A DNA stretch of 64,000 nt from Ylistrum balloti (GCF_031769215.1 NW_026782023.1:372001-436000), one strand, 5' to 3'. Counted from the first letter of the stretch, positions 41,261-63,700 are shown. A program made the numbers and translations. Notes: a model not told the origin generated them from the sequence alone.

Positions 41261-44200
41261 ATGGACTTTTTGAAGAATACAGTGACAAGATGCTTCATCT
41301 TTTGTGTGTTGTTCTTGGTGACAAACTTTGTCAATAAGGTAAGTAATGAGGGAGATAACATTTAAGGTAATTATATCAGAGTAGACAATGTATTATTAAT
41401 AGCAAAAATGAAATACAAAGAACAGGAGATATAGTTTAAGAATAGGTATTGATTTAAAGTGAAGTGAGAGGAGATGAGAAAATGTAAAAAGGCATTTTAT
41501 TTAAAAACAGGGGAGACAATTCATTTATTCATTCCAAGGAAAATGACATAATAAGAAAGAAAATAATGTAAAAACATGGAAAATAATATGAAGTAATGTG
41601 AGCATATTACAAGTAATTACAAGGTTAATGATAAGATAAAGAAAGATAATGTAAGTAAGAAGGGGAGGTAATATAAAAATAGGTGAGACAATTTATAATG
41701 AAATGTGATGTAAAATAATTTGAGAGATAATCTAAGAATGTAAATATTAGAAAGTGCAAAGTTGAGTTATAAGCATTTTACAATTTATAAATATGGAAAA
41801 TACTGTAAAATGGTAAAAAAAATATGGGAGGTTCTGTGAGTAGTAATGGTTTACTAGATAGTGTGAAAACAGGATGCTAAAATGTTAAACACAGAAGAAA
41901 AGAAGTTCATTCAATAACTGAGATATCATGTGAAAATAAAGTAAAATTTTTTAACATAAGAAAATAGTAATACATGTAACATTTAATGGAACAACAGAGC
42001 AATGGATGTATAGGAAAGGGTTAAAATTTAAGGTGAAAATATGAACTTTTATTCATTTTACAATAATTGCGAAACAAGCTATCAGATTATATCAATCATT
42101 GCTGTTGGCTCGAATGGAAGGGCATGAAGGTCTTACTATGTGAGGAAACCAAAGTACCCAAGGAAAACCCACATGATCAGACAGGTGACCACATACCTTT
42201 TCACATCCATTACTTGGAATTGAACCCTGGATGACTTGGTTTGCACCTGACCACCCTAAGATATAAAGTACTGTAATAGTTAGAGATATTGTCTCTAAAG
42301 TGATCAGACTTGGTATAAATCAATACATTTTACTAAAGGATTGGCACAATTTTACAGTGTTTGTGTTATTCTGTTTCAGTATGTCTTGTCAGTTCTTGAG
42401 TTCAAGTATCCTACTATATTCCAAGGGTAAGTGTTTTAAATGTTGTATTAAATGAGCTAATTAATTAGTTGTTTAATGTATAAAGACAATTTTCCTTTTT
42501 TGGAAGACCATTGCCTCTTTAAGAAAAAAATGTCTCACCTTCTTCTAGAAGGTGATTGTCTCCCTTGGAATGCAAATTCTCAGGAGCCAGTTTATCACAC
42601 GTTGAAAGTAACAGTCTCTCCCAGAAGTCATTTTTCACCCTCAGAATGGAATGATCTCCCTCAAAACGGGACTGTATGGCATTTAAGACATTTTTGTGTC
42701 TCAGAAGTTTGTCTTTCTTGGACAGCAATGATGTCCCTATGAATGCATATTTTTATAATTATAAGGTCATTATCTCACTAGAAATGCCATTGACTGACTA
42801 TGGAGGCAATTAATTCTCAGTTTTCTCCCTTGGAAAGCACTTGCCTCAAATGAATGCACTTGCCTCCTTCAGAAGATGATTATCCGTGCCATATTATGAT
42901 TGTCACACTCAGGAAGTGATAATCCTACATTGGAAATAGTTGTCTCCCTTGGAGTACAGGGATCTAGTATCTCACTGAAGACAGCAATTATTCTTTATTG
43001 GCATTACCTGTGTGTAGCATGTAATATGAATAATCAAGTCCTCATGAGTGGGTTGCTCAAATTCAAATTTCAATTTGCAACATTTCAGACATTTTTATCA
43101 CAAGTTACACTTACAATATTTACCTCATCTCTCTGGTAGAATGATTATGATTTTGAATATCCACTGGAACTGATCTGTGTATTCAGTGGATGTACAGTTT
43201 TGGATACTTAATTGGTGAAATGTGTATTAACATAAGGGAATTAAGAAATGCAACAGAGAGTTTACCTAACTTCATTTGCCATTATGTTTCTTTCCCTATA
43301 AGTTGTGTTACTAAAAATGAGTCAGGGATTAGTAAGCAGTTTTGTTTTGTAGATGGCAGACAGGTAATGTATTGTAAATAGGCTGTATTTGCACATGTAA
43401 ATGTTTTTATTATGTAGATGGCAGACATTTGTTGGTTTCCTGGTTATCAGGATGGGTGTGGTCACCAAACACTTGCCCTCCATGCTGACAGACAAGGAAA
43501 CTATCAGGTTTGTAAGCAGTTACGAGATAAATGTCATAAAGTAAACATGAAATCGTGACACAACACGATACTGTTTATGTTTTATCTGTTAATGATATTG
43601 GTGGTATAAGTAGCTTTGTATATGATTACAATATTTTAGACTGCCAAATTTCCAGATTTTGAAGAAGTAAAATTCATTTTTTTTTCAAAACCGAAAAAAA
43701 GTGTTATGAATTGTTGTTTGGAGCTCTGAAGTATCCTATATACATTTTTTGTTTCACTTGTGATGAAAAGTCATGGAAGCAATTAAATGTATTTACATCT
43801 GTAACTCATATCTTATTAGTGAACATTGACCAAATTCAGTAATACAGCTAGATCATGTTGTAGACACCTAAACACTTCTATTTTTACACAGTATCTAACA
43901 GATTATACATTCCAGCAGCTCTGAACATTAGAAATGCTGAGAAACTAAATTTTAAAGTTTAGCTCAGTTATTTGTAATCCAATCAAATCTGGAATATGGT
44001 TATGTTGTAGTATTGACATCTGAACCCAATAAATAGATAATTTTGTGTGTATATTTTGGACAAAAATGTCAGATTTTGAGAAATGATTACAGAATCTTTA
44101 TAGCTTGTTCTATTCATCTCAGATTTACATGTTGTTTTATGGTATTAGAGGAGTTTTGTTCTTCCTCCTCAAGAATGGTGATATTTTGGGGGTGAAAATG

Positions 44201-47200
44201 TCACGATTTTGTAAATTTTGGAAAATGAAGAATTTACAAAATTTGTTTTACAATGTAACAATGTATTTAATGTTCGATTGTGTTTATACATCAACATGAA
44301 ATTTTAGTATTTGGGAAGAGGGTGACACATGTTTTAGTGTATTTTGTAGTTTGCTCAAGAATGGCCATAACAAAGCAAGACTGGTGAGACATTTAATTAC
44401 GTATGTTATTTTAATGTTTTTTTTTAACAGATAGCATGACCTTGACTTGTACAGATGACGTTGGTCTTTATTTCAGACGTAGAGCAGTGATGTGGATCCC
44501 TGGCATGATGTTGTTTGTATCAGTGATATACTCAGGATCCAAGGCCTTAGCTAATCTGGTCAGTATAAACAACAGAACCTTGTTAACCTTTCTTGTGTCA
44601 GAATATGTATGTAACCCGACAACATTATCCTTGCTCTATTGACTGCATGGATCATTGGACTGTCCGGAAACTTACTTAACACGCTTTCTCACAATTATGA
44701 TCTGTTACACCAGTTTAAGTCTGATCTCCCAGGATCTAAATTAAGGATAATTACTATATATAGATTTCTTAACCAAACTCTCACTCAGTTTTGAAAAAAC
44801 TAAACACACCTATTCACATCCATCATCTCTGGTACAAGTTGGCATTTGGACCTCAAAGGGTCAAAATTGAGGTCACTGTAATCATAATGGAAAAATTGTC
44901 AAGTTCATTTTGTTTTGATCTGATTGTCATGCAACTTCGCACATTTACTCACAACCATCATCACTTCTGTCAAGATTTTGTGTCACTACCTGGTTATAAA
45001 AAGGAAGTCTCACATTCTATTATTAGAATTTTCAATATTAACATATCATTTCACATATAATGAAATGTGTGATGAATTTCTCTTTCATATCAATTAGATT
45101 TGCAATTGAGCTTTGTTTGATTTGATTGATATTCATATCTTTTAAAAATTCAAGTTAGCTGCTGACATGAGGGAATTGGATCTTCTGAAATACCTTGTGT
45201 ACAAACATTTGTTATGTGGCTGTAGGCTAACCACAAAAATAAAATGTCAGAAACCCAGACAATGAGTCATTGTGTTACCTGTTTTGTTTGTTTCTCTGGC
45301 TCTCTCCCTGTATGTGTACCTGTCAGAAACCTTGACAATGAGTCGTTGTGTTACCTGTTTTGTTTGTTTCTTTGGCTCTCTCCCTGTATGTGTACCTGTC
45401 AGAAACCTAGACAATGAGTCATTGTGTTACCTGTTTTGTTTGTTTCTCTGACTCTCTCCCTGTATGTGTACCTGTCAGAAACCTTGACAATGAGTCATTG
45501 TGTTACCTGTTTTGTTTGTTTCTCTGGCTCTCTCCCTGTATGTGTACCTGTCAGAAACCTAGACAATGAGTCATTGTGTTACCTGTTTTGTTTGTTTCTC
45601 TGGCTCTCTCCCTGTATGTGTACCAGTCAGAAACCTAGACAATGAGTCATTGTGTTACCTGTTTTGTTTGTTTCTCTGGCTCTCTCCCTGTATGTGTACC
45701 AGTCAGAAACCTAGACAATGAGTCATTGTGTTACCTGTTTTGTTTGTTTCTCTGGCTCTCTCCCTGTATGTGTACCTGTCAGAAACCTAGACAATGATTC
45801 TTTGTGTTACCTGTTTTGTTTGTTTCTCTGGCTCTCTCCCTGTATGTGTACCTGTCAGAAACCTAGACAATGAGTCATTGTGTTACCTGTTTTGTTTGCT
45901 CTCTTTCTCTGTTACTCTCTCCCTGTATGTGTACCTGTCAGAAACCTAGACAATGAGTCGTGTTACCTGTTTTGTTTGTTTCTCTGACTCTCTCCCTGTA
46001 TGTGTACCTGTCAGAAACCTAGACAATGAGTCATTGTGTTACCTGTTTTGTTTGTTTCTCTGACTCTCTCCCTGTATGTGTACCTGTCAGAAACCTAGAC
46101 AATGAGTCATTGTGTTACCTGTTTTGTTTGTTTCTCTGACTCTCTCCCTGTATGTGTACCTGTCAGAAACCTAGACAATGAGTCATTGTGTTACCTGGCT
46201 CTCTTGTTTGTTTCAATGAGTCATTGTGTTACCTGACTCTCTCCCTGTATGTGTACCTGTCAGAAACCTAGACAATGAGTCATTGTGTTACCTGTTTTGT
46301 TTGTTTCTCTGGCTCTCTCTCTCAGAAACCTGTGTTTGTCTGTATGTGTAGAAACCTAGACAATGAGTCATTGTGTTACCTGTTTTGTTTGTTTCTCTGA
46401 CTCTCTCCCTGTATGTGTACCTGTCAGAAACCTAGACAATGAGTCATTGTGTTACCTGTTTTGTTTGTTTCTCTGACTCTCTCCCTGTATGTGTACCTGT
46501 CAGAAACCTAGACAATGAGTCATTGTGTTACCTGTTTTGTTTGTTTCTCTGGCTCTCTCCCTGTATGTGTACCAGTCAGAAACCTAGACAATGAGTCATT
46601 GTGTTACCTGTTTTGTTTGTTTCTCTGACTCTCTCCCTGTATGTGTACCTGTCAGAAACCTAGACAATGAGTCGTGTTACCTGTTTTGTTTGTTTCTCTG
46701 ACTCTCTCCCTGTATGTGTACCAGTCAGAAACCTAGACAATGAGTCATTGTGTTACCTGTTTGTTATGCTCCCCCATATGCATATAGTTGCTGCTTTGTT
46801 TGTCCATTTTTATTTCTGTCCATGCTTTTGTGTCAGGAGCATATGTTTGTGAACATTTAAGCAAGGATCATGAAATTTGGTGTTAATATTGGTCATACTA
46901 AGACAATGTGTTATTTACCAAAGTCAGGGCATGCAGTCCATTATAGAGTTGTTGTCCTTGTTAAATCTTTTGTGTCCCAAGCAGAGCTTTGCTTGCATTT
47001 AAACTGGGATAATGAAACTTTTTTTATACATTGTTCATACTAAGATAATTGGCCTTTGTTGGGTAAATATAAAGTTGTTTTCTTGTTATTTTTAATGTTC
47101 TCCATGTTTGTATAGGCCTACTGGTTAAGAGTCTATATATTGTGTAATTTTGGTACATGTTTGTATAGGCCTACTGGTTAAGAGTCTATATATTGTGTAA

Positions 47201-50200
47201 TTTTGGTACATGTTTGTATAGGCCTACTGGTTAAGAGTCTATATATTGTGTAATTTTGGTACATGTTTGTTTTTTTTTGTTTCCAGTCTCTTCCTGTTTT
47301 CCTCTCTCTTCAGAATCTAGTCACAGTGATAAACTGTACAACACAGATGGCCATCTCTAGAAAGGTTAGTGGCTCTCATATGTGACAATGTATTTAACAT
47401 GCTACTGTCAGTGATAAAACCCATATGACCCCTGTTGTAAGATGGTATTTGATTAGCTACTGTCACTGATATAACTCTTGTGACCCCTGATGTAAGATGG
47501 TATTTGATTGGCTACTGTCACTGATATGACTGATGTGACTTCTGATGCTACATGCCCCTGTGAGGACTTTCTGCTGTCACATGCTGAAGATCCCCAGTGG
47601 CTTTTCAAAAAAGAGCAAGCATGATAAAACTGCTCCAGGGGTATAGGGGTAGTGCTAGGCCATGCAGATGTTTTAAGGCATTTGATGAACTTCAAAATTA
47701 CCCGAACATAAACCTAATCTATGTAGGCCCCTTATCCCTCCTTTCCACTTTTGAACATTTTTTAGACTACTAGAGTTAGGATTAGGCATTATTAGGCCCT
47801 GGAGTCGTCTTCTAAAACTAGCATAATCAAATACATTGTTACAGACGGTTTCAGCCCTCTGACGGGGATGCAGGTCGCCCCTCATGTCGCCAGAACACTG
47901 ACGTTTGTTGGTGAGACAATACCTGATATTTATTTGTTTGCTGTTAACTTTTTTTTTACAAAGATTTCCTCTCTGTTACCTTCATAATATGTAGTTATGT
48001 TTTTTGTGAATCAATTCATATTGATTACATGTTTTAGTATTTCTCTTTGTTTTATTTATCATTTCATTCTTCTATCAAGAATTTCTGTCTGGTTTTCAAT
48101 GGATTATTTTTGGCTCACCTTTTACATGTTTAACCATGCTGCTTCTTGGTTCTCTTGTTTAAACAGTATTAGCTAAATGCTGAATGAATTAACCAATAAA
48201 ATATGTAAATGTTTGGCTGGAGTAAGAACTATAACAGTATTATTATCTTATCTCTTGCAGCTGATGAGCTTATTTAGTTACCTGATGTTAATGTTGGTCA
48301 TTACTTCATCAATAGGAACCATCAACACAGACCCTCAGGTGTGTACTTTACTTAAACTCTGACCTTCCGGTGTGTATAATATTTCAACACAGACCCTCAG
48401 GTGTGTACTTTATATAAACTCTGACCCTCAGGTGTGTATACTCTATCAACACAGACTCTCAGGTATGTACTTTATATAAACTCTGACCCTCAGGTGTTTA
48501 TAATATTTCAACACAGACCCTCAGGTGTGTACTTTATATAAACTCTGACCCTCAGGTGTGTGTTGTTTATCAACTCTGAACCTCAGGTGTGTATTGTATA
48601 TCAACTCTGACCCTCAGGTGTGTATTGTGTATCAACTCTGACCCTCAATTTATATTGTATACCAACTCGGATACTCTGTTTTCTATTCTCCAACTTCTAA
48701 GTATATAATTATCTATTCATTGAAGTTCTGTGATTATTACTTGTACAAATACTGGAATCTATTGGTGAACTAGTCTTTTCTTTTCATTTTCAGTTTAGTG
48801 CTGATGGATATTTCTGGATGTGTATTCATATTATTTGCACAGGTAATAAGATTTCCTCTGAACTAAGCATTTATATATTTATAGTAGAAGAACTGTTCAG
48901 CTAGCACATTTCATGGATGCTGTATGACTCTTGCAGTACTGTAACAATATTAATAAATTTTACTTTTTATTCCACTTGAAATAGTAATTCATTTATAATT
49001 AATGCAAATACATATCAAGCTAAACCACATGTTTTTAAGGTAGCATATATCCTTAACTGTAACACAAATCACAGGTATAATGTGTAAGGTAGCATATAAC
49101 CTTAACTGCAACACAAATCTCAGGTATAATGTTTGAGGTAGCATATATCCTTAACTGCAACACAAATCTCAGGTATAATGTTTGAGGTAGCATATTGCCT
49201 TAACTGTAACACAAATCTCAGGTATAATGTTTGAAGTAGCATATTGCCTTAACTGTAACACAAATCACAAGTATAATGTTTGAAGTAGCATATAGCCTTA
49301 ACTGTAACACAAATCACAGATATAATGTGTAAGGTAGCATATATTCTTAACTGTAACACAAGTGTGAAAGGTAGCATATATCCTTAAGTGTAACACAAGT
49401 CACAGGTGTAATGTTTGAGGGATATGTAGTGTATATCCCTAACTCTGACAGCAGCTTTAATGTGGTACATATGTATATATATGTATCATCTGTCCCAAGC
49501 TCTAATGTAAATCACAAGTATGATGTGTAAGGTGGAATATATCCTTAACTTTAACACAAATCACAGGTATAATGGGAAAGGTAGCATATGTCCTTAAGTC
49601 TTAACTCAAACTGCAGCTTTTTGACATCTAAGAGAAAAGGTATCAAATAAAGGGTCTATTAAGTACGTGGTATATATAACAATAAAGATCAAGTCAAACA
49701 TTGGCACCATATCCTAATAGATATATATGTTTGATGCATTCTTTCAAGGTTATTTTTGATGGTTCAAATATTCATGGTTTTATCAATGAAAGAAAGGATG
49801 AATTTTTCATGCTTGTCATAAAAGAACTTTGTTTTCTGACTTTTCTCTGTCAGTTTTCAAGCTTGAAAGTTTTTTTAATTGATTTTTTTATTTATTTATT
49901 TCATTTTAGTATTTTTGAAGATTTCATTAAATCCTCAAAAATGATGAAAAAAGCAGATTCCTCAAAAATGCCATTTTCTTTATCAGTTACTGAGACATAA
50001 AAATACATGTTTGCAAATCTGAAAAAGGTGGAAGGATAGTATTGACAATGTTTCGATCCAAACCATGTGTTTCACATTCTGTTGCATTGCTTAACAAATG
50101 TTTTGCTGGGTTTTTTTTGTAGGTGCTTTACAGATTTATTCAAAACTGACAAAAGGCAGATTAAAAATAAGGTATGTACAGGTCACTGGATAGAGTTGTA

Positions 50201-53200
50201 AAATATGTGTGACGGTAGGATATATAAAACTTGGTGTCCTCACTCAAGTGACTTCATTTCTCAGGATTATGATCAAACATTGCATGAATTCATGTTTCAG
50301 GGTTCAAAGTCCAAACTCACTGTTTCCTTTTATTTTGATAAAACTTTAACACAATGGTAATCATAACTATATGGCCTGAAATGAGGTTGTGTGTCATATT
50401 GATGGATATAGAAATTTTCACAAATGTTTTCTAGTTTGAAATCTCTAAACAAAATGATGAACTTTGACTTAAGATATATATTGTTTAGACAAAGAAAGAT
50501 GGGTTCTTCAAATTGAGTGACTGACCCTCTGGTGGCTAAATGTACAGGCTCAAAAGGGAATAGTTTGACCATAAAACTTTTAGATGTTAACTACAAAAAC
50601 AAATTGTCAAGTTATCCTCGAGTTGTGATGTTCAGAAAAAACATATGAATAAAGGAATGAAACCACTCGCCCCACTTTCCACCCAATTTCCCCCACACCA
50701 CACTCAGTTGGACTTACTCACTCAATAACCAAGGAAATATATTTACATGTAAATGCACTGACATGAAGGTCACTTGCCCCTGGAGATATTTTTCAACTGG
50801 TTATCATATTGAAACACTTGAAATCCCAACCCTAACCATGCATATCTTACTCTGTATAGTGGTTTAATTTTCTGGGTTACTATTTCACATTTGTTCTGAT
50901 ATGGTGGCTTCACACATATGAAATTTTGTGCATTCCCCCCTTCTGTAATTTTCTGACCGTTGGATTAGTTGTAAAAGTATTTGGTGGATACCTAATGCCA
51001 TGAATATAGGGAAATGAAATCTTCCATGTATATCTATACACTTACTGAACAATCAATGAAATTCCCACAGTGACAATAACACAGTCCAATCCTCTCCAAT
51101 TCAGGTTTTATTTTCGCTCTGGGAATTTCATTTTAAAGAGTTTTAGTGGGGACTCTGTATACTAATAGTATCCACGGCCTTTCCAAGACATATTTCACCT
51201 ATCTTCATCGACAGGGATGTTGTGTCTCCACCCCGTGCTTTAATCATGCTACATGTTTCTTTCTTGCTCTTTCTGTTTTATAGAAGATGTTTTCCTGACT
51301 CGAGGGTTATCATGAAATAAAGAAACTGTAAACTTTTGATGGATAATTATGATTTGTTGTCTATAAATGTCCTTAAATGTTCAACTTATTACAAGTGAAT
51401 ATATTGATTTACTTATTTGCAGAAAACATACACAAAATGCGGCTAAAAATATAACTGTAATTATCTTAATTTCAGCTCACATGAAAAACTTTACTGCAAC
51501 TACATATACAGGTAAGAGTTCAAAGGTCACCAACTTTCTCTGATAATATAGATAAAGTGTCCTAGTTCACTGAATTTTGATTTAAAAATATTACTGTTAA
51601 AGCTTTACAAATCATTGACTTTTTGGCCTAACACATAGAAAGGTTATATTTAAGGGAAATAACTGTAGCAAAAAGTCATCTGACGAATTGATCTGCTGAA
51701 ATTAAACAAAGAAATATTTAAACAATAATGAAATTAAATGAAGAAATATTTAAACAATAATGAAATTAAATGAAGAAATATTTAAACAATAATGTATGAA
51801 AATTGAATGGAAAATGATGTGTTTTCAGAATTCATGAGGTTGAGAAAATCAAAGGGGGTTCATCTTGACTAGATCCTCTTCTAGCCAGTGCTGGTCGAGT
51901 AGATTTAGCCCCAAACCTTGAGCGTGTTTTACTGGTTTTACTTCAACTGAATTCCAGGCATTAGATTTTATTAAGATGTTGCTGGAAACAAGTGCTGTAA
52001 CATGGAAATTGTATACGTTGCTTCAAGGGTCTTCATGAAAGTCTTTCTTTAATTCGTATATTGCCCTATTTTTATGAATTTTGTGTTAACAGTTTGCATG
52101 TTGTACTCTCTTGTTTTTGAAACTTGTACACAAAATTGATATTTCAAGAAGTGAACAACCAGTGAATATGTATTGTATGTGATATAACTTTGATAGTTTT
52201 GTCCTATATGTTAGTCAGAGAAATACTTTACATCTTTATTTGTTGCCAGCATGGTCCTCCTAGCACCCTGTAGTTACCTGATTGGGGATGCACTTGACGC
52301 CATCAAATTTCCTTACCTATACTTCTCCAAATTCTACATAGGCTGTATATTCAGGCAAGTATCAAAATTTAACATGCTTTTGTCTATGAAATATACAGAG
52401 AATACATGGTCAGTATCTTAAAATATGAGCTGTATTTTGGCGACAGTGAAGGAAGACCCGAACCAAGACACTGACCATGTATTCTTTCTATCCAGTAAAT
52501 CAGTCCATCAAAACTTCTACAATTTTTTGATCCAATCTTTGTTTACCTGACATTGATGTTACACTGAATTTAGTCTGATGATTGACATGCACACAGAAGT
52601 AATTGTCCCAAACAGAAATAGAATTCCAAATTTCAAGGGATATGAATTTTATGAATTTTTGAAAATAAACTAGGATGTTACAACATATAAAATCACTTAT
52701 TTCAACAATAAATTTTATTGAGAAATGTATTTTTTTTAGTAAATTCAAATTCCTGTTTTCGTCAATGCGAAATACAGCAAAAATGATGTGGTAGGTGTAT
52801 TCCCACAATGTTAGTGCCAGTTACAGGATAAAAAACACAATGTCAATGTATATCGTTTAGTGGTAATCTTAATTTAGTTCATTTTGCACTAAAACATGAT
52901 AATGCTAATTGTAGTTTCAGAATGATTTTGATAAAAACTTACATCTTTGTCAATGAAGTGGTGTCGAAAATCCTTTATTATTACTACTAGGTCACAGGGA
53001 ACAAAAATGTAGTATACTTCCTTTACATAAAAGCTTTGATTTCTCAAACCAAAACACATAAATTAATATTAGCAATCTACTTCCACTATGTAGTGTTAAG
53101 GTCAAAGTTTAGCATGGAATCAAAGTAAACATACATATGAAATCTGAGAGAGATCAATTGAGTCTTCTCAAGAAAAAGCAATAACAAACTTGCCGAAATC

Positions 53201-56200
53201 AAAGATGACCATCTATCGGCCATTTTGCCTTTCTGCTCAGACCAAAAATCAATCTGGCACAACTGGGGACCAAGGGGAACCTACATATGAAATTTGAGAG
53301 AGATCCATGTGGCACTTTTCATGAAATAGGGAGAACAATCTTTATTGAAAAAATCCAAGATGACCACCCTTTAGCCATTTTGTTTGATTTTGGGTCTGAT
53401 CAGAAAAATAAAATGGTCGACAGTTGATCATCTTTGATTTTGACCAAGAAAGTTTGTTATCGCTATTTCTTGAGAAGTACATCAAAGATTTTTGTCAAAT
53501 TTCATGTGTATGTTTCTTCTGATCCCCAGTTGTGCCTGTTTGATTTTGGGAATGATCAGAAAAACAAAAATGGTCGACAGTTGGTCATCTTGGATTTTGC
53601 CTAGTACAGATGGTTATCTCTATTTCTTAACAAGTACTGAATGGGTCTCTCTCAAATTTTATACATATCTTCCCTTTAGTCTCTTCTTGTGCCCATTTGA
53701 TTGTGGGACTGATCAGAAAAATCAAAATGGCTTTCAGGTTACCATCTTGGATATGTCAGGTAAAGATTATCATTGCTTTTGCTGCAAAGGAATGTTCATA
53801 TTTTCTACCATTAAGAGCAAAAACAGAGAAGAGAAAAGAGGGAAGAAAAATCCAACTTTCAAAGAACAAATAAAAATGAAATAATGGTGGGCACTCTGTG
53901 ATCTCTTGTTCTAGTACATGTGTAAGTGACCTTGATCTACTTTTGGGTTGCAGTGGTTCACAAGTTATTTCTTTGAAATAGTGGAGATTTTTAAAATATT
54001 TCAGTGGTGTGTTTGGTGTGCTGTTGAACCTATATACGATACGTCTACAGGAGGCTTATCTGGAGTCCATTGAGTTTGTCAGGATACAAGGCTTCGCCAA
54101 GGTAAACAAAACCTTGAAAGATAATGATAATAATGATAGTTCCTTAGAAGGAAATATTTCACAATGATAATTAAATAGAATCAAAAGTCACTGTCATGTT
54201 GATCGTCACCTCACCGATCTTGAAAAAAAAATTCTTTTGCTGTATAAAGTCAATGCAAAGTGGACATACCTCGGTCATTGAATTATATGTTATGAATTCT
54301 AGATATAAAGGTTTACCAGAAAATATAGCCAGAAAATTAGCTATTATCTAAGTTAATAGTACTTAACAGAACATCTTGTAATAACATGTATATTATTTAT
54401 AATGCTATGTATTGGGAAACTTTCACCAATTTCACAAAATTTTACATGTAACACAAAATGTTAACACTGAAACGTGAAGAAAACAATGTTTTTCTCAGGC
54501 AAGTTTTTACCAGCACCCAAAAAGTATCATTTTCATGGTAGGGTAAAATTTTTCCAATATTGTTTTACGCTCCCCAAAGGGAGAGCATATAGTCACCGCT
54601 TTGTTCTTCTGTCCATCTGTCTGTCCATCATAATTTTGTCTGCAGTATAACACAAAAACTATTAGAGATATCAACATGAAGCTTCATAGATAGATAAATC
54701 TTAACAAGGAGAAATGCTGTGCACAAAAATCACCACTCTCTTTTGAATAATTTAGGAGTTGTTGCCCTTTGTAATTTTTCATACTTACATTTTGTTCAGA
54801 GCATAACACTAAAACTATTAGAGTTATCATCATGAAACTTCATAGGTAGATAGATCTCAGCAAGAAGTACAATGCACAAGAACCCTCACTCTTTTTAGCA
54901 TAATTTAGGAGTTATCGCCCTTTGTTATTTTTCATACTGATATTTTGTCCCAATCAGGGAGTGAAACCCTTCCATGTTTTTAGTTTATATATATTGTGAT
55001 ATTTCGATGTAATATTTTATGCTGCCAATTTTCTTTACAGATGGTTTCTTCTGTAATATCTCTCCAGTTTTTTGACATAACAGTAACACAATCTCATGCT
55101 GTCTGGTGAGTACTTCTACAAAATCTGTTTCTACCCTCTCTACTGAGAGATAAACATGAGATATGTAGGAGTTTTTTGACATGAAAGAATCACTAAATAC
55201 ATCCAACGCATTGATATCTACTCTCGAAACTCAGAGGGAGACATGGGTAACTAAACGGGAGACATGGTACAATTCAAAGGGAGACATGGGTAACTAAATG
55301 GGAGACATGGTACAATTCAGAGGGAGACATGGATAACTAAATGGGAGACATGGTACAATTCAGTGGGAGACATGGGTAACTAAATCGGAGACATGGTACA
55401 ATTCAGAGATATACATGGGAAAACTCTATTGGAGACATAGGACAACCCAGAGGGAGACATGGGTAACTCAGAGGGAGACATGGGGTAGCTCAGAGGAAGA
55501 CATGGGGAACTCAATAAAACATGGGACAACCCAGAGGGAGACATTGGGTAACTCACAGGGAGACATGGGGTAACTCAGAGGGAGACGTGGGGGTAACTCA
55601 GAGGGAGACATGGGTAACTCAGAGGAAGACATGGGGTAACTCAGAGGAAGACATGGGGTAACTCAGAGGAAGACATGGGGTAACTCAGAGGAAGACATGG
55701 GGTAACTCAGAGGGAGACATGGGGTAACTCAGAGGAAGACATGGGGGTAACTCAGAGGCAGACATGGTAACACAGAGGAAGATATGGGGTAACTCAGAGG
55801 AAGATATGGGGTAACTCAGAGGAAGACATGCGGTAACTCAGAGGAAGACATGGGGTAACTCAGAGGCAGACATGGGGTAACTCAGAGGAAGACATGGGGT
55901 AACTCAGAGGAAGACATGGGGTAACTCAGAGGAAGACATGGGGTAACTCAGAGGGAGACATGGTAACACAGAGGGAAACATAAGATAACTCACTGAGAAG
56001 CTTAAAGAAGACTGTTCTTGTCACTTAAGCTCTCTTTAGACCAGCATTTCAAAATTTTGAGTACACCATCATAAACAAATGAAAAACACAGACCTTGTCA
56101 ACATCCTGTTAAGTCTATGTTTGTGACACAGACCCTGTCAACATCCTGTTTAGTTTATGTTTGTGACACAGACCCTGTCATTATTTTATTCTGTCACAGA

Positions 56201-56729
56201 TCATTTCAACTTCAAGCGAGGTTTATATTGAGTCACTATATACATGTTTTATCCTATGATTTCCTCTGTTTGCAGGCTAGCTGTCAATCAACTATCAGGA
56301 TTTGTGTGCGAAGATCCCATGATTCCCTCTACAACATCAAATATTACAGACCCTGAGTTGTCAGCCAATAAGAACTCTTCTTACAACTCAGACACTATAT
56401 CATCCAATAAAAAATCATCTTACAGTGGAGAGGATACATCTTCTAGTGGCATGGCCTCTTACAGCATGGAATATTCCTCACCGGCCAATCGCATGTCTTC
56501 TTACAATGCAGATTTTTCCTCACCAGCCAATCACACACCTTCATACAATGCAGAGTACTCCTCACCAGCCAATTACACTTCTTCTCACAAGGAAGAGTAC
56601 ACCTCACCAGCCAATAGTATGGCATCTACTTTTCATGAACAATTTTATCAGCCAGGAATAATTCCTGGATTAGGGTCCAAACATAATGTATTATACAATG
56701 ACTTTTTACGAGATGACCAACATAAATAA
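41261..56729 (+). CDS. TMEM241: TMEM241 (SLC35D4) nucleotide-sugar-transporter-family protein, 435 aa with extended C-terminus, join(41261..41338,42380..42426,43418..43507,44477..44558,47287..47364,48261..48338,48794..48842,50123..50171,51476..51511,52250..52354,54005..54101,55041..55105,56276..56729)
   Basis: VNKYVLSVLEFKYPTIFQGWQT, YSGSKALANL, LPVFLSLQN, DPQFSADGYFW, LYCNYIYS and IKFPYLYF follow the TMEM241 motif order. 1308 nt in frame; intron 10 is GC-AG. Confidence 0.93.
42105..42250 (-). mobile_element. tRNA-derived SINE fragment with conserved central domain
   Basis: Plus-strand GAGGAAACCAAAGTACCCAAGGAAAACCCAC (SINE core-type motif) and GGAATTGAACCC (reverse B-box). Confidence 0.6.
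45246..46765. repeat. 76-bp minisatellite, ~20 units, TMEM241 intron 4; most units carry CAATGAGTCATTG and a pyrimidine tract
   Basis: GTCAGAAACC at 45246, 45322 and 45398. Confidence 0.98.
47103..47270. repeat. 53-bp tandem repeat x3 ending in the exon 5 polypyrimidine tract
   Basis: CATGTTTGT at 47103, 47156, 47209 and 47262. Confidence 0.95.
47400..47530. repeat. ~57-bp duplication just downstream of the TMEM241 exon 5 donor
   Basis: GACCCCTG..GTAAGATGGTATTTGATT.GCTACTGTCACTGATAT occurs twice. Confidence 0.85.
48321..48650 (+). repeat. 31-bp minisatellite made of copies of the TMEM241 exon 6/intron 6 junction
   Basis: G|GT at exactly 31-nt spacing: 48338 (true donor), 48369, 48400, 48431, 48462, 48493, 48524, 48555, 48586, 48617. 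Confidence 0.95.
49036..49610. repeat. 49-bp minisatellite (AGGTAGCATATATCCTTAACTGTAACACAAATCACAGGTATAATGTTTG), ~11 progressively degenerate units, TMEM241 intron 7
   Basis: AGGTAGCAT/AAGTAGCAT at 49038, 49087, 49136, 49185 and 49234. Confidence 0.92.
51705..51795. repeat. 33-bp AT-rich tandem repeat, about 3 copies
   Basis: AAGAAATATTTAAACAATAATG repeated three times. Confidence 0.85.
53100..53915. mobile_element. Composite non-autonomous element(s) of the CAAGATGG family, arranged as forward units followed by inverted units
   Basis: 53245-53275 is the reverse complement of 53521-53550; 53160-53190 is the reverse complement of ~53455-53485. The right end reads AACAAGAG... on the minus strand. 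Helentron/Helitron-like assignment is inference. Confidence 0.6.
54410..54559. mobile_element. Small fold-back MITE-like element
   Basis: TATTGGGAAACTTTCACC versus the reverse complement of the right end, TATTGGAAAAATTTTACCC. Confidence 0.4.
54562..54950 (+). mobile_element. Helentron-associated non-autonomous element (HINE/DINE-1/pearl-like) with two ~156-bp internal tandem units
   Basis: Starts TTTTACGC...GCATATAG, then a short CTGTC microsatellite, then duplicated AAAACTATTAGAG...CATGAA.CTTCATAG units 156 nt apart. This architecture is known for Helentron-associated elements. Confidence 0.7.
55240..55978. repeat. 22-bp G-rich minisatellite (GACATGGGGTAACTCAGAGGAA)n, ~33 units, TMEM241 intron 12
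   Basis: AGAGG at 55621, 55643 and 55665; the 5' part alternates two variants. Confidence 0.96.
56085..56182. repeat. ~40-bp tandem repeat, about 2.5 copies, upstream of the last TMEM241 exon
   Basis: ACACAGACC.TGTCA occurs three times. Confidence 0.8.
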
Positions 56730-56795: not shown

Positions 56796-56801
56796 AATAA
56801 A
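56796..56801 (+). terminator. Candidate TMEM241 polyadenylation signal AATAAA
   Basis: First AATAAA after the stop codon, 66 nt downstream of it. Confidence 0.45.
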
Positions 56802-57742: not shown

Positions 57743-60700
57743 TTATTTTTGAACATTTGGATTCATTTCTAACTGGAGAACTCGTGTTGGAGGAATTTCA
57801 AGTTCTGCATTCACCTGTTAAAACATAGTCATAATTTATAAGTAACATGGCAAGATATACTGTTTTCATGAATTACAAATTTTTTAATAGAATCAATCGT
57901 TTTACAAAATTGACAAACTTTACTGAGATGCAATTAGGAGCTTGTTACTTTCACATTTATAGACAACAAATTATTTAGTGATATAAACATTTCCCTACAA
58001 AATTAATTCCACTTTGAAAATCAGACAAAAATGGATATTTACAATAAAAAAATCACCTATGAATAGATATCTTAGTGTGATATATGAAGAACATTATAAG
58101 ATTGATAAGGTGATTGACTGCAACCTTGATAGTCGTTATTAGTACCTTAGAGTTGACATATTGGTGAAGCAACATTCTCAGTTCTGCGTTCTGTTGGCGC
58201 AGTGCGTCTGTCTCATTGATAAGTGTTGACCGACTCGTTAGGGTCTCACTGTAAACAACACAGTAATATTTTCTAAAATTCAAAGCTCTACTGTTTGTTA
58301 ACATTATTATGCTGTGATTTTGGGTTGAGAAATTGTGTCGCTATACCCCCGTTATGAAAGGCTGTAGGTCCCATCACACTGTGGTTAGACTTTAAACCGA
58401 GGGTTGCTGCTCTGGCTAGAATTGTATGGACCATAGTTACATACATTATGTAAATGGATTGCTAATGACCAAACTTTTACAAGGAAACGGGACAGACTTG
58501 CTGAAGGCGATGATCACATCAATACAAATGGACAAAAACTAAAATCAAAGACAGCGTAAAGAGGAAATGAATAAACATCAAAACTACCGGAAAGACAATT
58601 TCTGATCTCCCACAAAAAAAAACAGGAAAGATCAGTGCTCTAACTATATAGAAGCACTGGACATATACATGTCCATTTAAAACATGTCTTGGTACCTGTA
58701 TTTTTCTAGTCCCTCTAGTAAAGCATCCCAGAGTCTTTCCTTGTTTGTAGAGATGAGAGATGGATACTTCGCCCAGTAATCAGAATCGTCTGAACTGTCA
58801 CGCTCTTCAAGGGAGACAATCTTAAACTGGGACTGCTTCCCTTTCTCCCTGCAAAAGCATAATGTATTTAAAGGACAGAGGATGACGTTAATCATACTAG
58901 GAAAATTACATCTTTTAGCATAACTGGAAAGAATTATTTTTAGAATTGCATGTATTATAATAGAATGACAGGATGACACATATCTACCCAATGCTGACCC
59001 CCACCACAGGCTTTATAGGCAGGGCAAAAGGGGCCAAACTGAGTTAAATTTCAAAAAACAGTCTTCATAGTTGAAAGGGTCACCAAAATTATGAATTTCA
59101 TGACCCCAGATATACATTACATCTAGTCTAGGGTCTATTTCTGATAATTGAAATTCACTGGGTCCATTCTTGGTATGTTTGTTTTACTTTTATTATTCTT
59201 AAGAATTTGAGGAGGGTAATCCAATGATAGTAAGCTGTGTTTACAGAATGAGATGGAAGAATTTTTATTCTTGGATAAGGAAAACATACTTGGTGGGTTG
59301 TCGGTTTTCCTCAACAAATGCCCGAAGAGCCTTCAAAACTTCATTGGGATGGATCAGTTCCACTGTCTCACTCTTAGTTGATTCCAGGTCGCCCTCTTTT
59401 CCTGTAAGCTTTCGAATCTCTTCATCAATATCGTCCAGCTTCAAAAAGGAGAACAATTGATTGTATGTGCAGGAAGTTTAGTTTGATGAAATCTTAATAC
59501 AAGAATAAACATAAAAGAGAACATATTTGTTTTTTGGTCGGAATTATTGGTAAACCCAAGGTGAAGTTTGCTATTCAGTATAACAATCCATACAAATTTT
59601 CTGAGGTTTTAGCATACACACATACCTCTCCACTGACTTCTGTCTGAGAGGGCTCATCCACGACTGTCTCCTTCTGAAAATACAAATAATCCCTATATAT
59701 CTCAAGAAACACCTGTTTTTTGAAAAGTAAAGATATAAAAATTCAACTGTAAAATATTAGCTGTTCATTATATGGTTTGTAGTGTTAAATGTAAATCATT
59801 TCAAGTCCTACTTAAAATAATAACATTTGCAGCATTCAAACATACCTCCTCATCCTGTGGCTGTTTTCGACCTTTGATATGCATGAAATAACTAGCCAAC
59901 AGATGGACATCTTCCTCCGTGTCTATTCCTAGGGCCTGAAATAATGTCACATGATCCATACATTTAAACAGAAGAGAGCACAGCCTTAACTTCTATCGAG
60001 TCAAGGATTAAAAAATCTCAGAACAGGTTATGTTTAATATTTTTCTTTTATTCCTAAAATACTTAACTTAAAACAATTTCAGTCAAAGGTAGGAAATTTG
60101 AACAAGTGTGTTGTCATATATTGTGTATATCATAAGGTTACATTGATATTTCTCAGCTGTAAAGGAGCACAAGTAGTTAAACTCATATAATGATACGACA
60201 ATTTGACCTTTGACCTTCTTTTGTGGCTTTGAATACTTTTTTGAGGATTTAAGATTAGAGAAGATATTCACCAATGGATGAACAAAGAAGGTGGACAGAT
60301 GAAGGCATATGAAAGAACAAAGTTACTTGTTGCTTTAACTTCATTTGAATTCGACCAGATACAGGTTTTTTAATACCAATAGAAACAAATATGTGTATGT
60401 CAAACATTTAAAATGTTCCTGATTAATGTACTTACACTAAAGATTGCATCCAATTTCATTAATGAGCGCTCATCTTTTTCCAGAGGAGCCAGCAGCTTGT
60501 TTAATTTGGACTCCACCAAAAATCCCTGTCAAAGTAAACAAGATGAATTAAACAATATCCGATATGTCCTTGGGTAGAATTCCAAGTTTGTTTTGTTTTC
60601 AAACTGTGGTGTGTATTTTAGTATTGATATTGAATCTTTAACATCTGAAGGGTTAACTCTGAGTTGGCATTTGATCTCAGATGTCTTTAGTATGACTAAT

Positions 60701-63700
60701 GACTCGGTGTATGATATCTGACTTTGAATACTGTGTATATGATATATTTGACCTTAGTATGAAATATGATCATGGATACTGTGCATGATATTTGACCTTG
60801 GATACTGTGTGTATGACACCTGACCTTGGATACTGTGTGTATGACATCTATCCTTGGATATTGTGTGTATGACACCTGACCTTGAACACTGTGTGTATTA
60901 CACCTGACCTTGAATACTGTGTGTATGACACCTGACCTTGGATACTGTGTGTATGACACCTGACCTTAGATACTGTCTGTATGACACCTGACCTTGGATA
61001 CTGTGTGTATGACATTTGACCTTGGATACTGTGAGTATGACATTTGACTTTGGATACTGTGTGTATGACATCTAACCTTGGATACTGTTTGCATGACATT
61101 TGACCTTGAATACTGTGTGCATAACATCTGACCTTGGATACTGTTTGCATGATATTTGACCTAGAATACTGTGTGTATGACACCTGACCTTGGATACTGT
61201 GTGTATGACATTTGACCTTGGATACTGTGAGTATGACATTTGACCTTGGATACTGTGTGTATGACATCTAACCTTGGATACTGTGTGTATGACATCTGAC
61301 CTTGGATACTGTGTGTATGACATCTAACCTTGGATACTGTTTGTATGACATTTGACCTTGGATACTGTGTGCATAACATCTGACCTTGGATACTGTTTGC
61401 ATGACATTTGACCTAGAATACTGTGTGCATGACATCTGCCCTTGGATACTGTGTGTTTGACATCTGACCTTGGATTCTGTGTATGACATCTAACCTTGGA
61501 AACTGTGTGCATGACATCTGACCTTGGATACTGTGTGCATGACATCTGACTTTGGATACTGTTTGTATGACATCTGACCTTGGATACCATGTGTATGACA
61601 TCTGACCTTGGATACCATGTGTATGACATCTGATCTTAGATACAGTGTATAAGACATTTGGCATTCAATCCTCTGTGTATGACATCTGACTTGAGATAAT
61701 ATTTGTATGAACTTTGACCTTGGATGAGCATGTTTAAAACACTTCGGACTAAAAACAAGATTGTGTACCTAATACTTCTTTAGACTAAAACAGGATAAAA
61801 TTCTAAAATCTCACAAAAAGAAAAGTACCTACCGACTCATCACAGAGAAGTTCCAGGATCAGTTTGATGGTGGTGGCGTTGATTTTGGACAGAAGCGTGC
61901 TCTTGACTGGTTGGTGGTCTGGAGGGAGACTCCCATCTGCATTTTCATCCAGTTCACCATCTTCATCCTCTTCCTCCTCTCCAGCCGTGTGGTGACTCCC
62001 TTCAGTCAGTTAAAAGTAATGTGAAGGTAGAATTTCAATTAGAATTGATAAAAAGCTTGTCCTTTCTTGATTTCATAATTTCTTTAACCGGTGAAAGTTA
62101 CTTGGTCATTAGTTAATCTTGTACCCTCAGTAAGTAATTTAGGTCTTTCATCTGAGACTTGATTTAAGTGATCTTTGAGGAGAGGGACTTTGTGTTACCT
62201 TGGTCTAACGATGTATAACTCTTCACCATTAGACATTGTCTCACCTGTTTGTGACATCACTTCCTGTATAATTTGTTGAGCTGAGACCCCTTTCCTCTTG
62301 GTTGCTTCACTAACGATGGGACCAGCATTTTCTAAGAAATTACTGTGGTGCAACATCAAAAGACATCATGAATAAATGTTTGTTTTTCATTGAAGATAAG
62401 AGTACAGTAAGATATCAAAAATGCAAAAATGTTATAAATTGATTTGAAAATATCAACAGATGTCACAGTAACAATAGCATTGAGATAATGACAACATTAC
62501 ATATATAAAATGGCCAGTAAAGCAAATTAAGAATCTTACCCCTAAGGTTGAGAGATATCACCTGCCAGGAGTGAAAGATTCTACATGTATTTATCATTCT
62601 CAGGTACAATAAACACTAAAATATAAGTCAGGGTTATTTAGGTTTAAACATTCTAGAAGAAAAACTGTTTAATTCCCATGAATCTATCAAGACAGCAAGA
62701 CTGATTTTGATTGGTTGACTTACATATCTGGTGTCTGATACATAAGGCCAAGCTGATGTTCATGGATGATGCGGTCAGCTTCTAGAATCGCATTTACAAG
62801 TTCTTTACATTCTTCCTCGTTCATACACCACACATCATGAAACTTTTTGTGATCGGCCGCCATGAAATGTCTGACAATAAGAAAATTTCACAGATAAAAT
62901 AAAATGACATAACAAAAAGAACACCACCTTGTTTGCAGTTTTTAAGTGTGAAGTGTATAGTTATGTAAAATCATATAACAATTCAAAGTTCTCTGAAAAA
63001 AACTAAAATTGATGACACTTGATTTTATGGGAAAATAAAACTCACGAAATCCATTATCACTGAAAATTCATGTATTTTAAAAAGCTATCATGTTGTGTAC
63101 ACATGACCAATTTTCCACTGATTAAGAGAAGCCAAGATATCAAGAAATGTAATTATCCTCCATGATTAATCATTTTAAACAGAGAATACATGTTTGATCT
63201 CCATCCTGTTTGATGAAGTCTAACCTAATTACAAAGTTACAAAGTTTTCATAGAAGAATTTCAGTGAGCGCAGATGGTATGAGTCACAGTGACCTACATT
63301 AGTTGTGTTGGTGTGGCTACTGCTCAGGACAATGGAATTTTATATTAAATGTTCAAAGAGGCTGTAAGTGAGAACAGTAACTGGAGGTGTCACAGCACAA
63401 CCCGCTCTGTTGCCAAAGACCATAACATCAGCAGAATTTCTCAACATTGAAAGAACTCCTTTCTTTATGTATATTTCATATGTACATTTTGTGTCTACAT
63501 TATCAGTAATAACATATACCACACATTTGCTGTACCAAGTTTTATACGGTGTAAAAGAAATTAAAACATTCAGTGTTAAGGACTATAACGTGGGCCAAAA
63601 TCCAACACATGACATAAGACAGATGAAGAGATAGAATGGTGATCCCTGAGTCCCAACCAACTTGACTCCTCGTATAATCCAACCCTACCCCAACTGGCTG

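What the first reader, a model, noticed from the sequence alone, without database searches (positions are those of the whole stretch)
56276..56729. TMEM241 carries a ~135-aa extra C-terminal tail with 14-aa (Y/F)(S/T)SPAN repeats
Seen: where vertebrate TMEM241 (~300 aa) ends shortly after its last helix, this ORF continues with a Ser/Tyr/Asn-rich tail. It holds four S-P-A-N units exactly 42 nt apart (56478, 56520, 56562, 56604: EYSSPAN, DFSSPAN, EYSSPAN, EYTSPAN) plus two degenerate upstream SSY units. The frame is intact, the SPAN core is invariant while the linkers diverge, and a unique segment (FYQPGIIPGLGSKHNVLYNDFLRDDQHK) follows. Known: SLC35 transporter termini are cytosolic, and S/T-P motifs are proline-directed kinase sites. 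Inference: a lineage-specific disordered phospho-regulated or sorting module grafted onto a Golgi nucleotide-sugar transporter.
Basis: partly seen in the sequence, partly recalled or inferred. Interest (0 to 1): 0.7.

Follow-up and report, generated by a model that had tools for sequence, protein, structure and literature searches.

The report
Scallop TMEM241 repeat-expanded C-terminal tail
The last exon of the scallop gene for a Golgi sugar-nucleotide transporter (TMEM241) really does encode a long, floppy, serine/tyrosine-rich tail with 14-residue repeats. It is a scallop-family stretching of a shorter tail that all molluscs have, and it is a modest, already-annotated curiosity rather than a new kind of system.

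Summary
Window 56276-56729 is the last coding exon of Ylistrum balloti TMEM241-like (XP_060066142.1, 435 aa). It holds a 42-nt tandem array (3.4 copies by TRF, no indels), with four S-P-A-N units at exactly the stated coordinates.

The tail is not a graft:
- All molluscs sampled carry a 33-62-aa tail after the last helix. It usually ends in a motif [DE][FYM][IL][RK], here within HNVLYNDFLRDD.
- Four scallops have 112-151 aa, because a Ser/Tyr/Asn-rich linker with 2-5 repeat units expanded between the helix and that motif.
- Vertebrates have 9-13 aa.

Selection is purifying. dN/dS is 0.14-0.24 for the whole tail, 0.06-0.09 for the C-terminal segment, 0.19-0.44 for the repeats, and 0.02-0.09 for the membrane core. 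AlphaFold2 gives no structure for residues 301-422 and a weak helix at 423-432.

A relative's polyadenylated transcript is spliced at the same acceptor. No RNA run was found for Ylistrum itself.

The S-P dipeptide is positionally conserved only in the last unit, so the phospho-module idea is weak. The best reading is a disordered cytosolic tether that carries a conserved terminal sorting or binding motif. Interest is low to moderate.

The parts
41261..55105 (+). Exons 1-12 of the TMEM241-like gene, encoding the membrane core (residues 1-285). Mapped exons are at 41261-41338, 42377-42427, 43419-43508, 44475-44558, 47287-47367, 48258-48338, 48791-48844, 50119-50169, about 52250-52346, 54000-54104 and 55038-55105. 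One short exon (residues about 184-196) was not located.
   Evidence: tblastn of P0001 against the window. Exon sequences were read. The donor is GTCTG|gtgagt at 55105/55106.
56274..56275 (+). AG splice acceptor of the last intron, in the context ttgcag|G. The first exon base, 56276, completes the Trp285 codon.
   Evidence: The acceptor sits at the same position in Pecten (L003), Argopecten (L004), the unnamed pectinid genomic contig (L006) and a metagenomic outgroup contig (L005).
56276..56729 (+). Last coding exon (residues 286-435 plus the TAA stop).
   Evidence: 100% identical to P0001 residues 286-435. The open frame was read.
56277..56321 (+). End of transmembrane helix 10 and the conserved VCEDPM junction (residues 286-300).
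   Evidence: AlphaFold2 places a helix at 280-295 with pLDDT 85-98. VCEDPM is invariant in six pectinid-like sequences. dN/dS is about 0.07-0.10.
56322..56468 (+). Ser-rich segment with older degenerate units (SANKNSSY, SSNKKSSY, GMASYSM), residues 301-349.
   Evidence: the repeat finder family D2, spacing 39 nt. dN/dS 0.16-0.47. pLDDT 35-59.
56469..56636 (+). Four 42-nt (14-codon) tandem units, residues 350-405: 56469-56510, 56511-56552, 56553-56594 and 56595-56636.
   Evidence: Copy number is 4 here, 3 in Pecten, 5 in Argopecten and 2 in an unnamed pectinid.
56637..56726 (+). Unique conserved C-terminal segment (residues 406-435).
   Evidence: For the overlapping test segment (residues 399-435), dN/dS is 0.06-0.09, as low as the membrane core. 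Conserved in all four scallops.
56682..56717 (+). Terminal motif HNVLYNDFLRDD (residues 421-432). It contains YNDF, the only YxxPhi match in the tail, and the mollusc-wide [DE][FYM][IL][RK] core.
   Evidence: AlphaFold2 predicts a helix at 423-432 with low confidence, pLDDT about 52.
56796..56801 (+). AATAAA, the likely polyadenylation signal. It is followed by a GTGCAATATTT element shared with the Pecten and Argopecten 3' flanks.
   Evidence: This is read from the sequence, with no RNA data for this species.

Best explanation
Window 56276-56729 is the genuine last coding exon of the Ylistrum balloti orthologue of TMEM241. TMEM241 is a 10-helix SLC35-type transporter, and the human protein imports UDP-GlcNAc into the cis-Golgi.

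The exon finishes helix 10 and then encodes a 140-residue extension. By homology this extension faces the cytosol, and it is predicted to be intrinsically disordered.

The extension has three layers:
- An ancestral junction, VCEDPM.
- A Ser/Tyr/Asn-rich linker that grew in the scallop family by tandem duplication of a 42-nt (14-codon) unit. It now has 2-5 copies depending on species.
- An ancestral C-terminal short linear motif, HNVLY-x-D-F-[LI]-[RK]-D-D, which is as strongly constrained as the membrane core.

Proposed mechanism (inferred): the terminal motif is the working part. It would be a helix-forming sorting or partner-binding signal, of the kind that sets localisation in other nucleotide-sugar transporters. 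In bivalves of the scallop/mussel/oyster group it has YxxPhi-plus-acidic character. The repeat region would act mainly as a flexible tether whose length and composition, rather than its exact sequence, are under weak purifying selection.
For: Shown here:
- Identity and gene model.
- Orthology to vertebrate TMEM241, E about 1e-51.
- The family profile matches the solved GDP-mannose transporters 9s35 and 5oge at E 6e-29 and 6e-21.
- AlphaFold2 gives 10 confident helices, then pLDDT 32-59 with no secondary structure for 301-422, then a weak helix at 423-432.
- Tail length by group is 9-13 aa in vertebrates, 17-32 in arthropods, echinoderm and hemichordates, 33-62 in other molluscs and 112-151 in scallops.
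- The [DE][FYM][IL][RK] motif lies 6-19 residues from the C-terminus in most of the roughly 40 mollusc-like sequences, with one-residue near-variants in several others. It is absent from every named non-mollusc sequence.
- Repeat copy number is 2, 3, 4 and 5 in four scallops. Orthologous units are more alike between species (35-37 of 42 nt) than most paralogues within a species, so the array is old.
- dN/dS is 0.02-0.09 for the core, 0.14-0.24 for the tail, 0.06-0.09 for the C-terminal segment and 0.19-0.44 for the repeats.
- In an unnamed pectinid, two polyadenylated transcript contigs join the core to the tail. They part from the genomic contig exactly at the AG acceptor, with 0 mismatches over the following 494 nt.

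From papers:
- Human TMEM241 is a cis-Golgi UDP-GlcNAc transporter (PMC10689955).
- Nucleotide-sugar transporters have both termini in the cytosol, and short C-terminal motifs (KVKGS, KDSKKN, IIGV) set their localisation (PMC9368800).
Against: - No RNA data exist here for Ylistrum itself. The only run found, X1, is DNA.
- The role of the terminal motif is pure inference.
- YxxPhi is not universal. Some oysters have F in place of Y, and gastropods have QQDM[IL]R.
- The predicted terminal helix has low confidence.
- dS between the scallops is high (0.6-1.5, partly saturated), and repeat units may be misaligned, so the dN/dS values are rough.
- dN/dS of 0.2-0.4, together with regularly spaced aromatic residues, could mean the repeats do more than act as a spacer.
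Confidence: 0.6

Rival explanations
1. The (Y/F)(S/T)SPAN units are an array of proline-directed kinase sites, so phosphorylation of the tail regulates transporter activity or trafficking.
For: Ylistrum has five [ST]P sites in the tail, four of them in the repeat cores. The region is Ser-rich (23% Ser), is predicted to be disordered and is cytosolic by homology, all of which is typical of phosphoregulated tails. The last unit's S-P is kept in all four scallops.
Against: S-P is lost in orthologous or inner units of relatives, which read SAAN, LPAN, SSTN, SLSN and LPTN. Pecten keeps only two [ST]P sites, and their positions differ among species. No phosphorylation data are available.
Confidence: 0.15
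2. The Tyr/Phe-Ser-rich repeats form a multivalent 'sticker' low-complexity domain. It would drive self-association or clustering of the transporter, or recruit it to glycosyltransferase assemblies, on the cytosolic face of the Golgi. Copy number would tune valency.
For: There are 15 aromatic residues in 135 tail residues, spaced roughly every 7 and flanked by Ser. The aromatic positions are conserved as Y/F across species while their neighbours vary. dN/dS is 0.19-0.44 rather than about 1.
Against: This rests on composition only, with no test of self-association. Copy number varies 2-5 without an obvious correlate. Other molluscs manage with a linker of a few dozen residues.
Confidence: 0.1
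3. The conserved core of the unit is selected at the nucleotide level, as the pentamer CCAAT in a fixed frame (xCC AAT). It would be an embedded DNA or RNA element, for example NF-Y-type CCAAT boxes or an RNA-binding-protein site. The peptide repeat would then be partly a by-product.
For: - All five repeat Asn columns with at least three species are AAT in every species. Among control columns with a conserved amino acid, 77 of 204 have identical codons (Fisher p 0.009). Among control Asn columns, 2 of 8 do (p 0.016).
- The preceding codon changes its amino acid (A, T, S, P) through first-base changes, yet keeps its third base C in 18 of the 19 codons listed in those five columns.
- There are 4-8 same-strand, same-frame CCAAT copies per species.
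Against: - The pattern was found post hoc, with few independent columns.
- The site is a 3' terminal exon whose downstream neighbour is convergent in Pecten and, from unverified ORF fragments, apparently here too, so there is no obvious promoter to serve.
- There is one exception, TCA AAT in Pecten.
- An antisense ORF as the cause is excluded, because it is interrupted by stops in the other species.
Confidence: 0.07
4. Annotation artefact. In Ylistrum the tail exon is not the exon normally used, or is not translated, and the open frame persists by chance.
For: No RNA run for this species was found. The database protein carries an XP_ accession, which as far as I know marks a computed gene model.
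Against: - A 150-codon open frame in DNA of 35% G+C is improbable by chance.
- The frame and the acceptor are conserved in four scallops and one outgroup contig.
- dN/dS is well below 1.
- The exon also encodes the end of helix 10, which aligns with the vertebrate C-terminus.
- A relative's mRNA uses it.
- A second individual keeps the frame.
Confidence: 0.04

Closest known systems
Vertebrate TMEM241 (human cis-Golgi UDP-GlcNAc transporter, PMC10689955)
   Same: It is orthologous over the whole 10-helix core: 39% identity to rat and E about 2e-51. The last helix aligns with the start of this exon.
   Different: Vertebrate proteins are 296-299 aa and end 9-13 residues after the last helix. The scallop protein runs on for 140 residues, with repeats and a terminal motif that vertebrates lack.
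TMEM241 orthologues of other molluscs (for example Mytilus edulis, Ostrea edulis, Crassostrea virginica, Mercenaria, gastropods)
   Same: They have the same exon-encoded end of helix 10 and a tail ending in a related motif. Mussels and oysters have HNVLY-x-D-[FY]-[IL]-K. Clams have T-[RK]-E-[YF]-I-K, and gastropods have QQDM[IL]R.
   Different: Their tails are 33-62 residues and have no 14-residue SPAN-type tandem array. The scallop linker is two to four times longer.
C-terminal localisation motifs of other SLC35 nucleotide-sugar transporters (UGT2 KVKGS, SLC35B4 KDSKKN, CMP-sialic acid transporter IIGV; review PMC9368800)
   Same: Each is a short conserved motif at the cytosolic C-terminus of a 10-helix transporter, and this is the precedent for a sorting role.
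   Different: The sequence is unrelated: it is neither a dilysine motif nor a terminal valine. Here the motif sits at the end of a linker of more than 100 residues. No function has been shown for it.
Coding minisatellites / low-complexity tandem repeats in disordered protein tails
   Same: The unit length is a multiple of three (42 nt). Copy number varies between related species, constraint is relaxed but purifying, and the region is predicted to be disordered.
   Different: The units are old and individually orthologous across genera, rather than recently homogenised. The CCAAT core is unusually stable at synonymous sites.

Membership tests
TMEM241 / SLC35-type nucleotide-sugar transporter | Full-length sequence orthology to characterised TMEM241 | tested here: met
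   P0001 finds vertebrate TMEM241 at E about 1e-50, covering the core. Sources name the hits 'UDP-N-acetylglucosamine transporter TMEM241 homolog'.
TMEM241 / SLC35-type nucleotide-sugar transporter | Ten-helix drug/metabolite-transporter fold like Vrg4 or the CMP-sialic acid transporter | tested here: met
   The family profile matches GDP-mannose transporter chains 9s35_A (E 6e-29) and 5oge_A (E 6e-21) over positions 7-304. AlphaFold2 gives ten confident helices up to residue 295. Pfam TPT is below its cutoff for rat TMEM241 and absent for the scallop protein.
TMEM241 / SLC35-type nucleotide-sugar transporter | UDP-GlcNAc transport and cis-Golgi residence | not testable with these tools
   Known only for the human and mouse protein (PMC10689955).
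Proline-directed-kinase phospho-regulated tail | Positionally conserved [ST]-P sites across orthologues | tested here: not met
   Only the last unit keeps S-P in all four scallops. The other units read SAAN, LPAN, SSTN, SLSN or LPTN in relatives.
Proline-directed-kinase phospho-regulated tail | Observed phosphorylation | not testable with these tools
   No proteomic data are available here.
YxxPhi tyrosine-based sorting signal | Y-x-x-[LIMVF] in a cytosolic, accessible segment | tested here: met
   There is a single match in each scallop tail: YNDF, YNDF, YDDF and YEDF. It lies in the region predicted to be unstructured or weakly helical. Cytosolic orientation is by homology only (PMC9368800).
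YxxPhi tyrosine-based sorting signal | Conservation of the Tyr and the Phi position wherever the motif is conserved | tested here: inconclusive
   It is kept in scallops, in Ostrea and in the outgroup contig. The named Mytilus and Crassostrea virginica sequences have Y at the Phi position (YNDY, YEDY). Several unnamed sequences with oyster-like C-termini read FEDY or lack the Tyr. Gastropods read QQDM[IL]R. The invariant core is [DE]-Phi-[IL]-[RK] instead.
YxxPhi tyrosine-based sorting signal | Binding to an adaptor mu subunit | not testable with these tools
   The complex predictor accepts only session sequences or bacterial, archaeal and phage references, so no job was sent.
In-frame coding tandem repeat | Head-to-tail copies with a period that is a multiple of 3, beyond chance | tested here: met
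   TRF gives period 42, 3.4 copies, 82% matches, no indels and score 177. The same array is present in a second DNA data set.

The most novel reading that the evidence does not exclude
The unit core that stays constant is not the peptide S-P-A-N but the DNA pentamer CCAAT, in a fixed codon phase. It is held at synonymous sites and through amino-acid replacements across four scallop genera. If so, the tail exon would carry an embedded array of 4-8 same-strand CCAAT elements (a DNA or RNA signal) overlapping the coding sequence.
Probability: 0.07. Interest if true: 0.6.

Novelty: new variant of a known kind. Interest (0 to 1): 0.27.

Why it matters
TMEM241 was only recently shown to be a Golgi UDP-GlcNAc transporter, and nothing is known about how it is localised or regulated. 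This analysis shows two things. Molluscs carry a conserved C-terminal motif that vertebrates lack. One bivalve family has pushed that motif out on a 2-5-unit repeat tether.

That gives a natural length series for asking whether the tail motif steers Golgi residence or partner binding in nucleotide-sugar transporters. Beyond that it is an ordinary case of low-complexity expansion in a disordered tail, in a gene model that is already in the public database. I found no paper that mentions TMEM241 together with scallops.

Tried and rejected
- Pfam on the tail exon and on one core exon gave no family. Pfam on the whole protein gave nothing above the cutoff.
- RNA evidence in Ylistrum: the run search returned one run, X1. 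When laid, it proved to be DNA. Its contigs run through the intron/exon boundary at even depth, and it has no joints at gene exon borders. It therefore says nothing about expression.
- An exhaustive profile-free search of 1.84 billion representatives with the tail alone gave only the protein itself, one pectinid fragment (P0002), one outgroup fragment (P0004) and one spurious 2472-aa hit. A word-index search with the tail alone added nothing.
- P0002 appears to read on past the stop. This is a gene-caller artefact, because the contig has TGA TGA there.
- An antisense ORF across the repeats (window 56443-56625, minus strand, 60 aa, with WLVR repeats) is rejected as an explanation for the nucleotide conservation. 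The same antisense frame has stops in Pecten, Argopecten and the unnamed pectinid.
- Luminal N-glycosylation of the tail is unlikely. The N-x-S/T sequons are not conserved between species, and the terminus is cytosolic by homology.
The stored database protein P0001 was used instead, and dN/dS was computed exon by exon.

Full report
**1. What is in the sequence**

At window 56274-56275 an AG follows a polypyrimidine tract (ttgcag). From 56276 a frame stays open to TAA at 56727-56729.

Tandem Repeats Finder reports a period-42 array at 56475-56615, with 3.4 copies, 82% matches, no indels and score 177. The repeat finder shows four in-register copies spaced 42, 42 and 42 nt. It also shows an older family (core CAGCCAAT...TCTTACA) with two further copies upstream, spaced 39 nt.

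The four units are:
- EYSSPANRMSSYNA
- DFSSPANHTPSYNA
- EYSSPANYTSSHKE
- EYTSPANSMASTFH

**2. Which gene it is**

An exhaustive HMMER search of 1.84 billion representative proteins with the 150-residue translation found a 435-aa protein identical over residues 286-435. This is XP_060066142.1, 'transmembrane protein 241-like' of the saucer scallop Ylistrum balloti. The tail is therefore already part of a public gene model.

tblastn of that protein places 12 of its exons between 41261 and 56729 on the + strand. One short exon was not located, which implies 13 exons in all. The penultimate exon ends at 55105 (GTCTG|gtgagt), and base 56276 completes the Trp285 codon.

The protein finds vertebrate TMEM241 at E about 1e-50. 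A profile of 70 orthologues matches the solved GDP-mannose transporters 9s35 and 5oge at E 6e-29 and 6e-21.

Human TMEM241 is a cis-Golgi UDP-GlcNAc transporter needed for mannose-6-phosphate tagging (PMC10689955). Transporters of this class have ten helices with both termini in the cytosol (PMC9368800).

AlphaFold2 with the 70-sequence alignment gives ten confident helices, with pLDDT 85-98. The last is 280-295, so the first ten or so residues of this exon are membrane helix, not tail. Residues 301-422 have pLDDT 32-59 and no secondary structure. A short helix is predicted at 423-432 with pLDDT about 52.

**3. How far the tail is shared**

I measured the length after the column of residue 295 in the 70-sequence alignment:

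| Group | Tail length (aa) |
|---|---|
| Vertebrates | 9-13 |
| Arthropods, an echinoderm, hemichordates | 17-32 |
| Non-pectinid molluscs | 33-62 |
| Ylistrum | 140 |
| Pecten maximus | 125 |
| Argopecten irradians | 151 |
| Unnamed pectinid | 112 |

The tails are not unrelated. All four scallops, mussels and oysters share VCED/ACED/VED just after the helix, and they share HNVLY-x-D-[FY]-[LI]-[KR] near the end. Clams have T-[RK]-E-[YF]-I-[KR]. Gastropods have QQDM[IL]R.

A pattern [DE][FYM][IL][RK] lies 6-19 residues from the C-terminus in most of the roughly 40 mollusc-like sequences. Several others have near-variants. It is in none of the named non-mollusc sequences.

So the ends of the tail are ancestral to molluscs. 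What is scallop-specific is the long Ser/Tyr/Asn-rich middle (23% Ser, 10% Asn, 15 aromatic residues in 135).

A 96-aa fragment on a metagenomic contig (L005) begins at the same acceptor. It keeps VCEDPM and HNVLYNDI, and it has one unit-like stretch but no array. It looks like an outgroup with an intermediate linker.

**4. History of the repeats**

Copy number of the SPAN-type unit is 4 in Ylistrum, 3 in Pecten, 5 in Argopecten and 2 in the unnamed pectinid.

At the nucleotide level:
- The first units are orthologous (Ylistrum u1 against Pecten u1, 36 of 42).
- So are the penultimate units (Ylistrum u3 against Pecten u2, 35 of 42).
- So are the last units (Ylistrum u4 against Pecten u3, 37 of 42, and 34 and 31 of 42 against Argopecten and the fourth species).
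- Ylistrum u2 is closest to Ylistrum u1 (34 of 42).

The array therefore predates the divergence of these genera, with later gains and losses of single units. It is not a recent expansion.

Within Ylistrum the SPAN core is invariant. In relatives the inner units read SAAN, LPAN, SSTN, SLSN and LPTN. Only the last unit keeps S-P-A-N in all four species.

**5. Selection**

I obtained genomic loci for Pecten and Argopecten and transcript contigs for the fourth species. I paired codons exon by exon, without building a joined model for any search, and computed Nei-Gojobori dN/dS:

| Region | dN/dS |
|---|---|
| Membrane core | 0.02-0.09 |
| Whole last exon | 0.14-0.24 |
| Helix end plus VCEDPM | 0.07-0.10 |
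| Ser-rich segment | 0.16-0.47 |
| Repeats | 0.19-0.44 |
| C-terminal segment (399-435) | 0.06-0.09 |

dS is 0.6-1.5, so these values are approximate. The most constrained part of the tail is its end, not the repeats.

**6. Expression**

The only public run holding this stretch (X1) proved to be DNA. A 2.5-kb contig runs from the intron through the exon into the 3' flank at even depth, and there are no joints at exon borders. It does show the same four-unit array without indels in a somewhat different haplotype, with one nonsynonymous change (56425 G>A, Ser to Asn).

Direct RNA evidence comes from a relative. Two Logan contigs of 1399 and 1389 nt, from two runs, carry the complete 410-aa frame from core to tail, and at least the first (L001) ends in a poly(A) run after AATAAA. 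A genomic contig of the same species is identical to the transcript for 494 nt downstream of the junction. It diverges exactly at ...ccccag|G.

The orthologous acceptor is thus used, and the tail is on the same mRNA as the core. In the window an AATAAA lies at 56796-56801, followed by an element shared with the Pecten and Argopecten 3' flanks.

**7. Mechanism**

Shown here:
- It is a real terminal exon.
- It contains an old in-frame tandem array.
- Selection is purifying and strongest at the C-terminal motif.
- The linker is predicted to be disordered.

Inferred:
- The tail faces the cytosol, by homology.
- The terminal motif is the functional element. Precedent exists, because short C-terminal motifs set the localisation of several SLC35 transporters (PMC9368800).
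- In scallops the motif contains the tail's only YxxPhi match, followed by acidic residues. From general knowledge, that is the form of adaptor-binding sorting signals.
- The repeat region would serve mainly as a flexible tether.

I put this at about 0.6.

An annotation artefact is unlikely (0.04).

**8. A side observation**

Every unit, including the two old ones, carries xCC AAT.

- The Asn codon is AAT in all species in all five unit columns that have three or more species. Among control columns with a conserved amino acid, only 77 of 204 have identical codons (Fisher p 0.009). Among control Asn columns, only 2 of 8 do (p 0.016).
- The preceding residue changes among A, T, S and P by first-base substitutions, while its third base stays C. 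The one exception is in Pecten.
- An antisense ORF cannot explain this, because it is broken in the other species.

The pattern was found post hoc and rests on few columns. I record it as the most novel reading not excluded (about 0.07).

**9. Verdict**

The finding is real and correctly described, but its interpretation needs adjusting. It is a family-level expansion of an ancestral mollusc tail, not a grafted module, and the conserved working part is most likely the terminal motif. The gene model is already public.

No paper in the searched library mentions TMEM241 with scallops. Novelty: a new variant of a known kind. Interest: 0.27.

Noticed in passing
window 56362-56615; L003, L004, L001 last exons: The pentamer CCAAT, always as xCC AAT in the coding frame, recurs in the tail exon: 6 copies in Ylistrum, 4 in Pecten, 8 in Argopecten and 5 in the unnamed pectinid. 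It is unusually stable at synonymous sites, while the residue before Asn changes among A, T, S and P.
   Followed up: partly
The exon end plus GTGTGT repeats at about 31-nt spacing. Argopecten irradians has it too, as six extra copies of the last six codons of exon 6 at 31-nt spacing. The ladder is therefore shared between genera or arises recurrently.
   Followed up: partly
L004 5761-7727 (Argopecten irradians TMEM241 intron 2): The first 13-15 codons of exon 3 (residues 43-57) occur about 19 times, at roughly 70-nt spacing, upstream of the real exon. This is a satellite built from an exon start or acceptor region.
   Followed up: no
window 55228-55992 and 56086-56180: The last intron holds a 22-nt satellite (35 copies, 81% matches) and a 40-nt repeat (2.4 copies), just upstream of the tail exon.
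   Followed up: no
window 58053-58991 (minus strand) and 60696-61664: Minus-strand ORF fragments downstream of the gene (for example one containing ALRQQNAELRMLL) may belong to a convergent neighbour gene. In Pecten the convergent neighbour is a gene with NYD-SP28 domains (L003). I ran no comparison of the window fragments. Further on, a satellite gives overlapping minus-strand ORFs with a repeated peptide of roughly 28 residues.
   Followed up: no
window 56425: The DNA run X1 differs from the window by G>A here, changing Ser to Asn in the Ser-rich part of the tail. Four further differences lie in the 3' flank (56782, 56856, 56922, 57065).
   Followed up: no
L006 676-681: The database protein P0002 runs past the true C-terminus because the gene caller read the TGA TGA stops as sense. 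It is not a real extension.
   Followed up: yes
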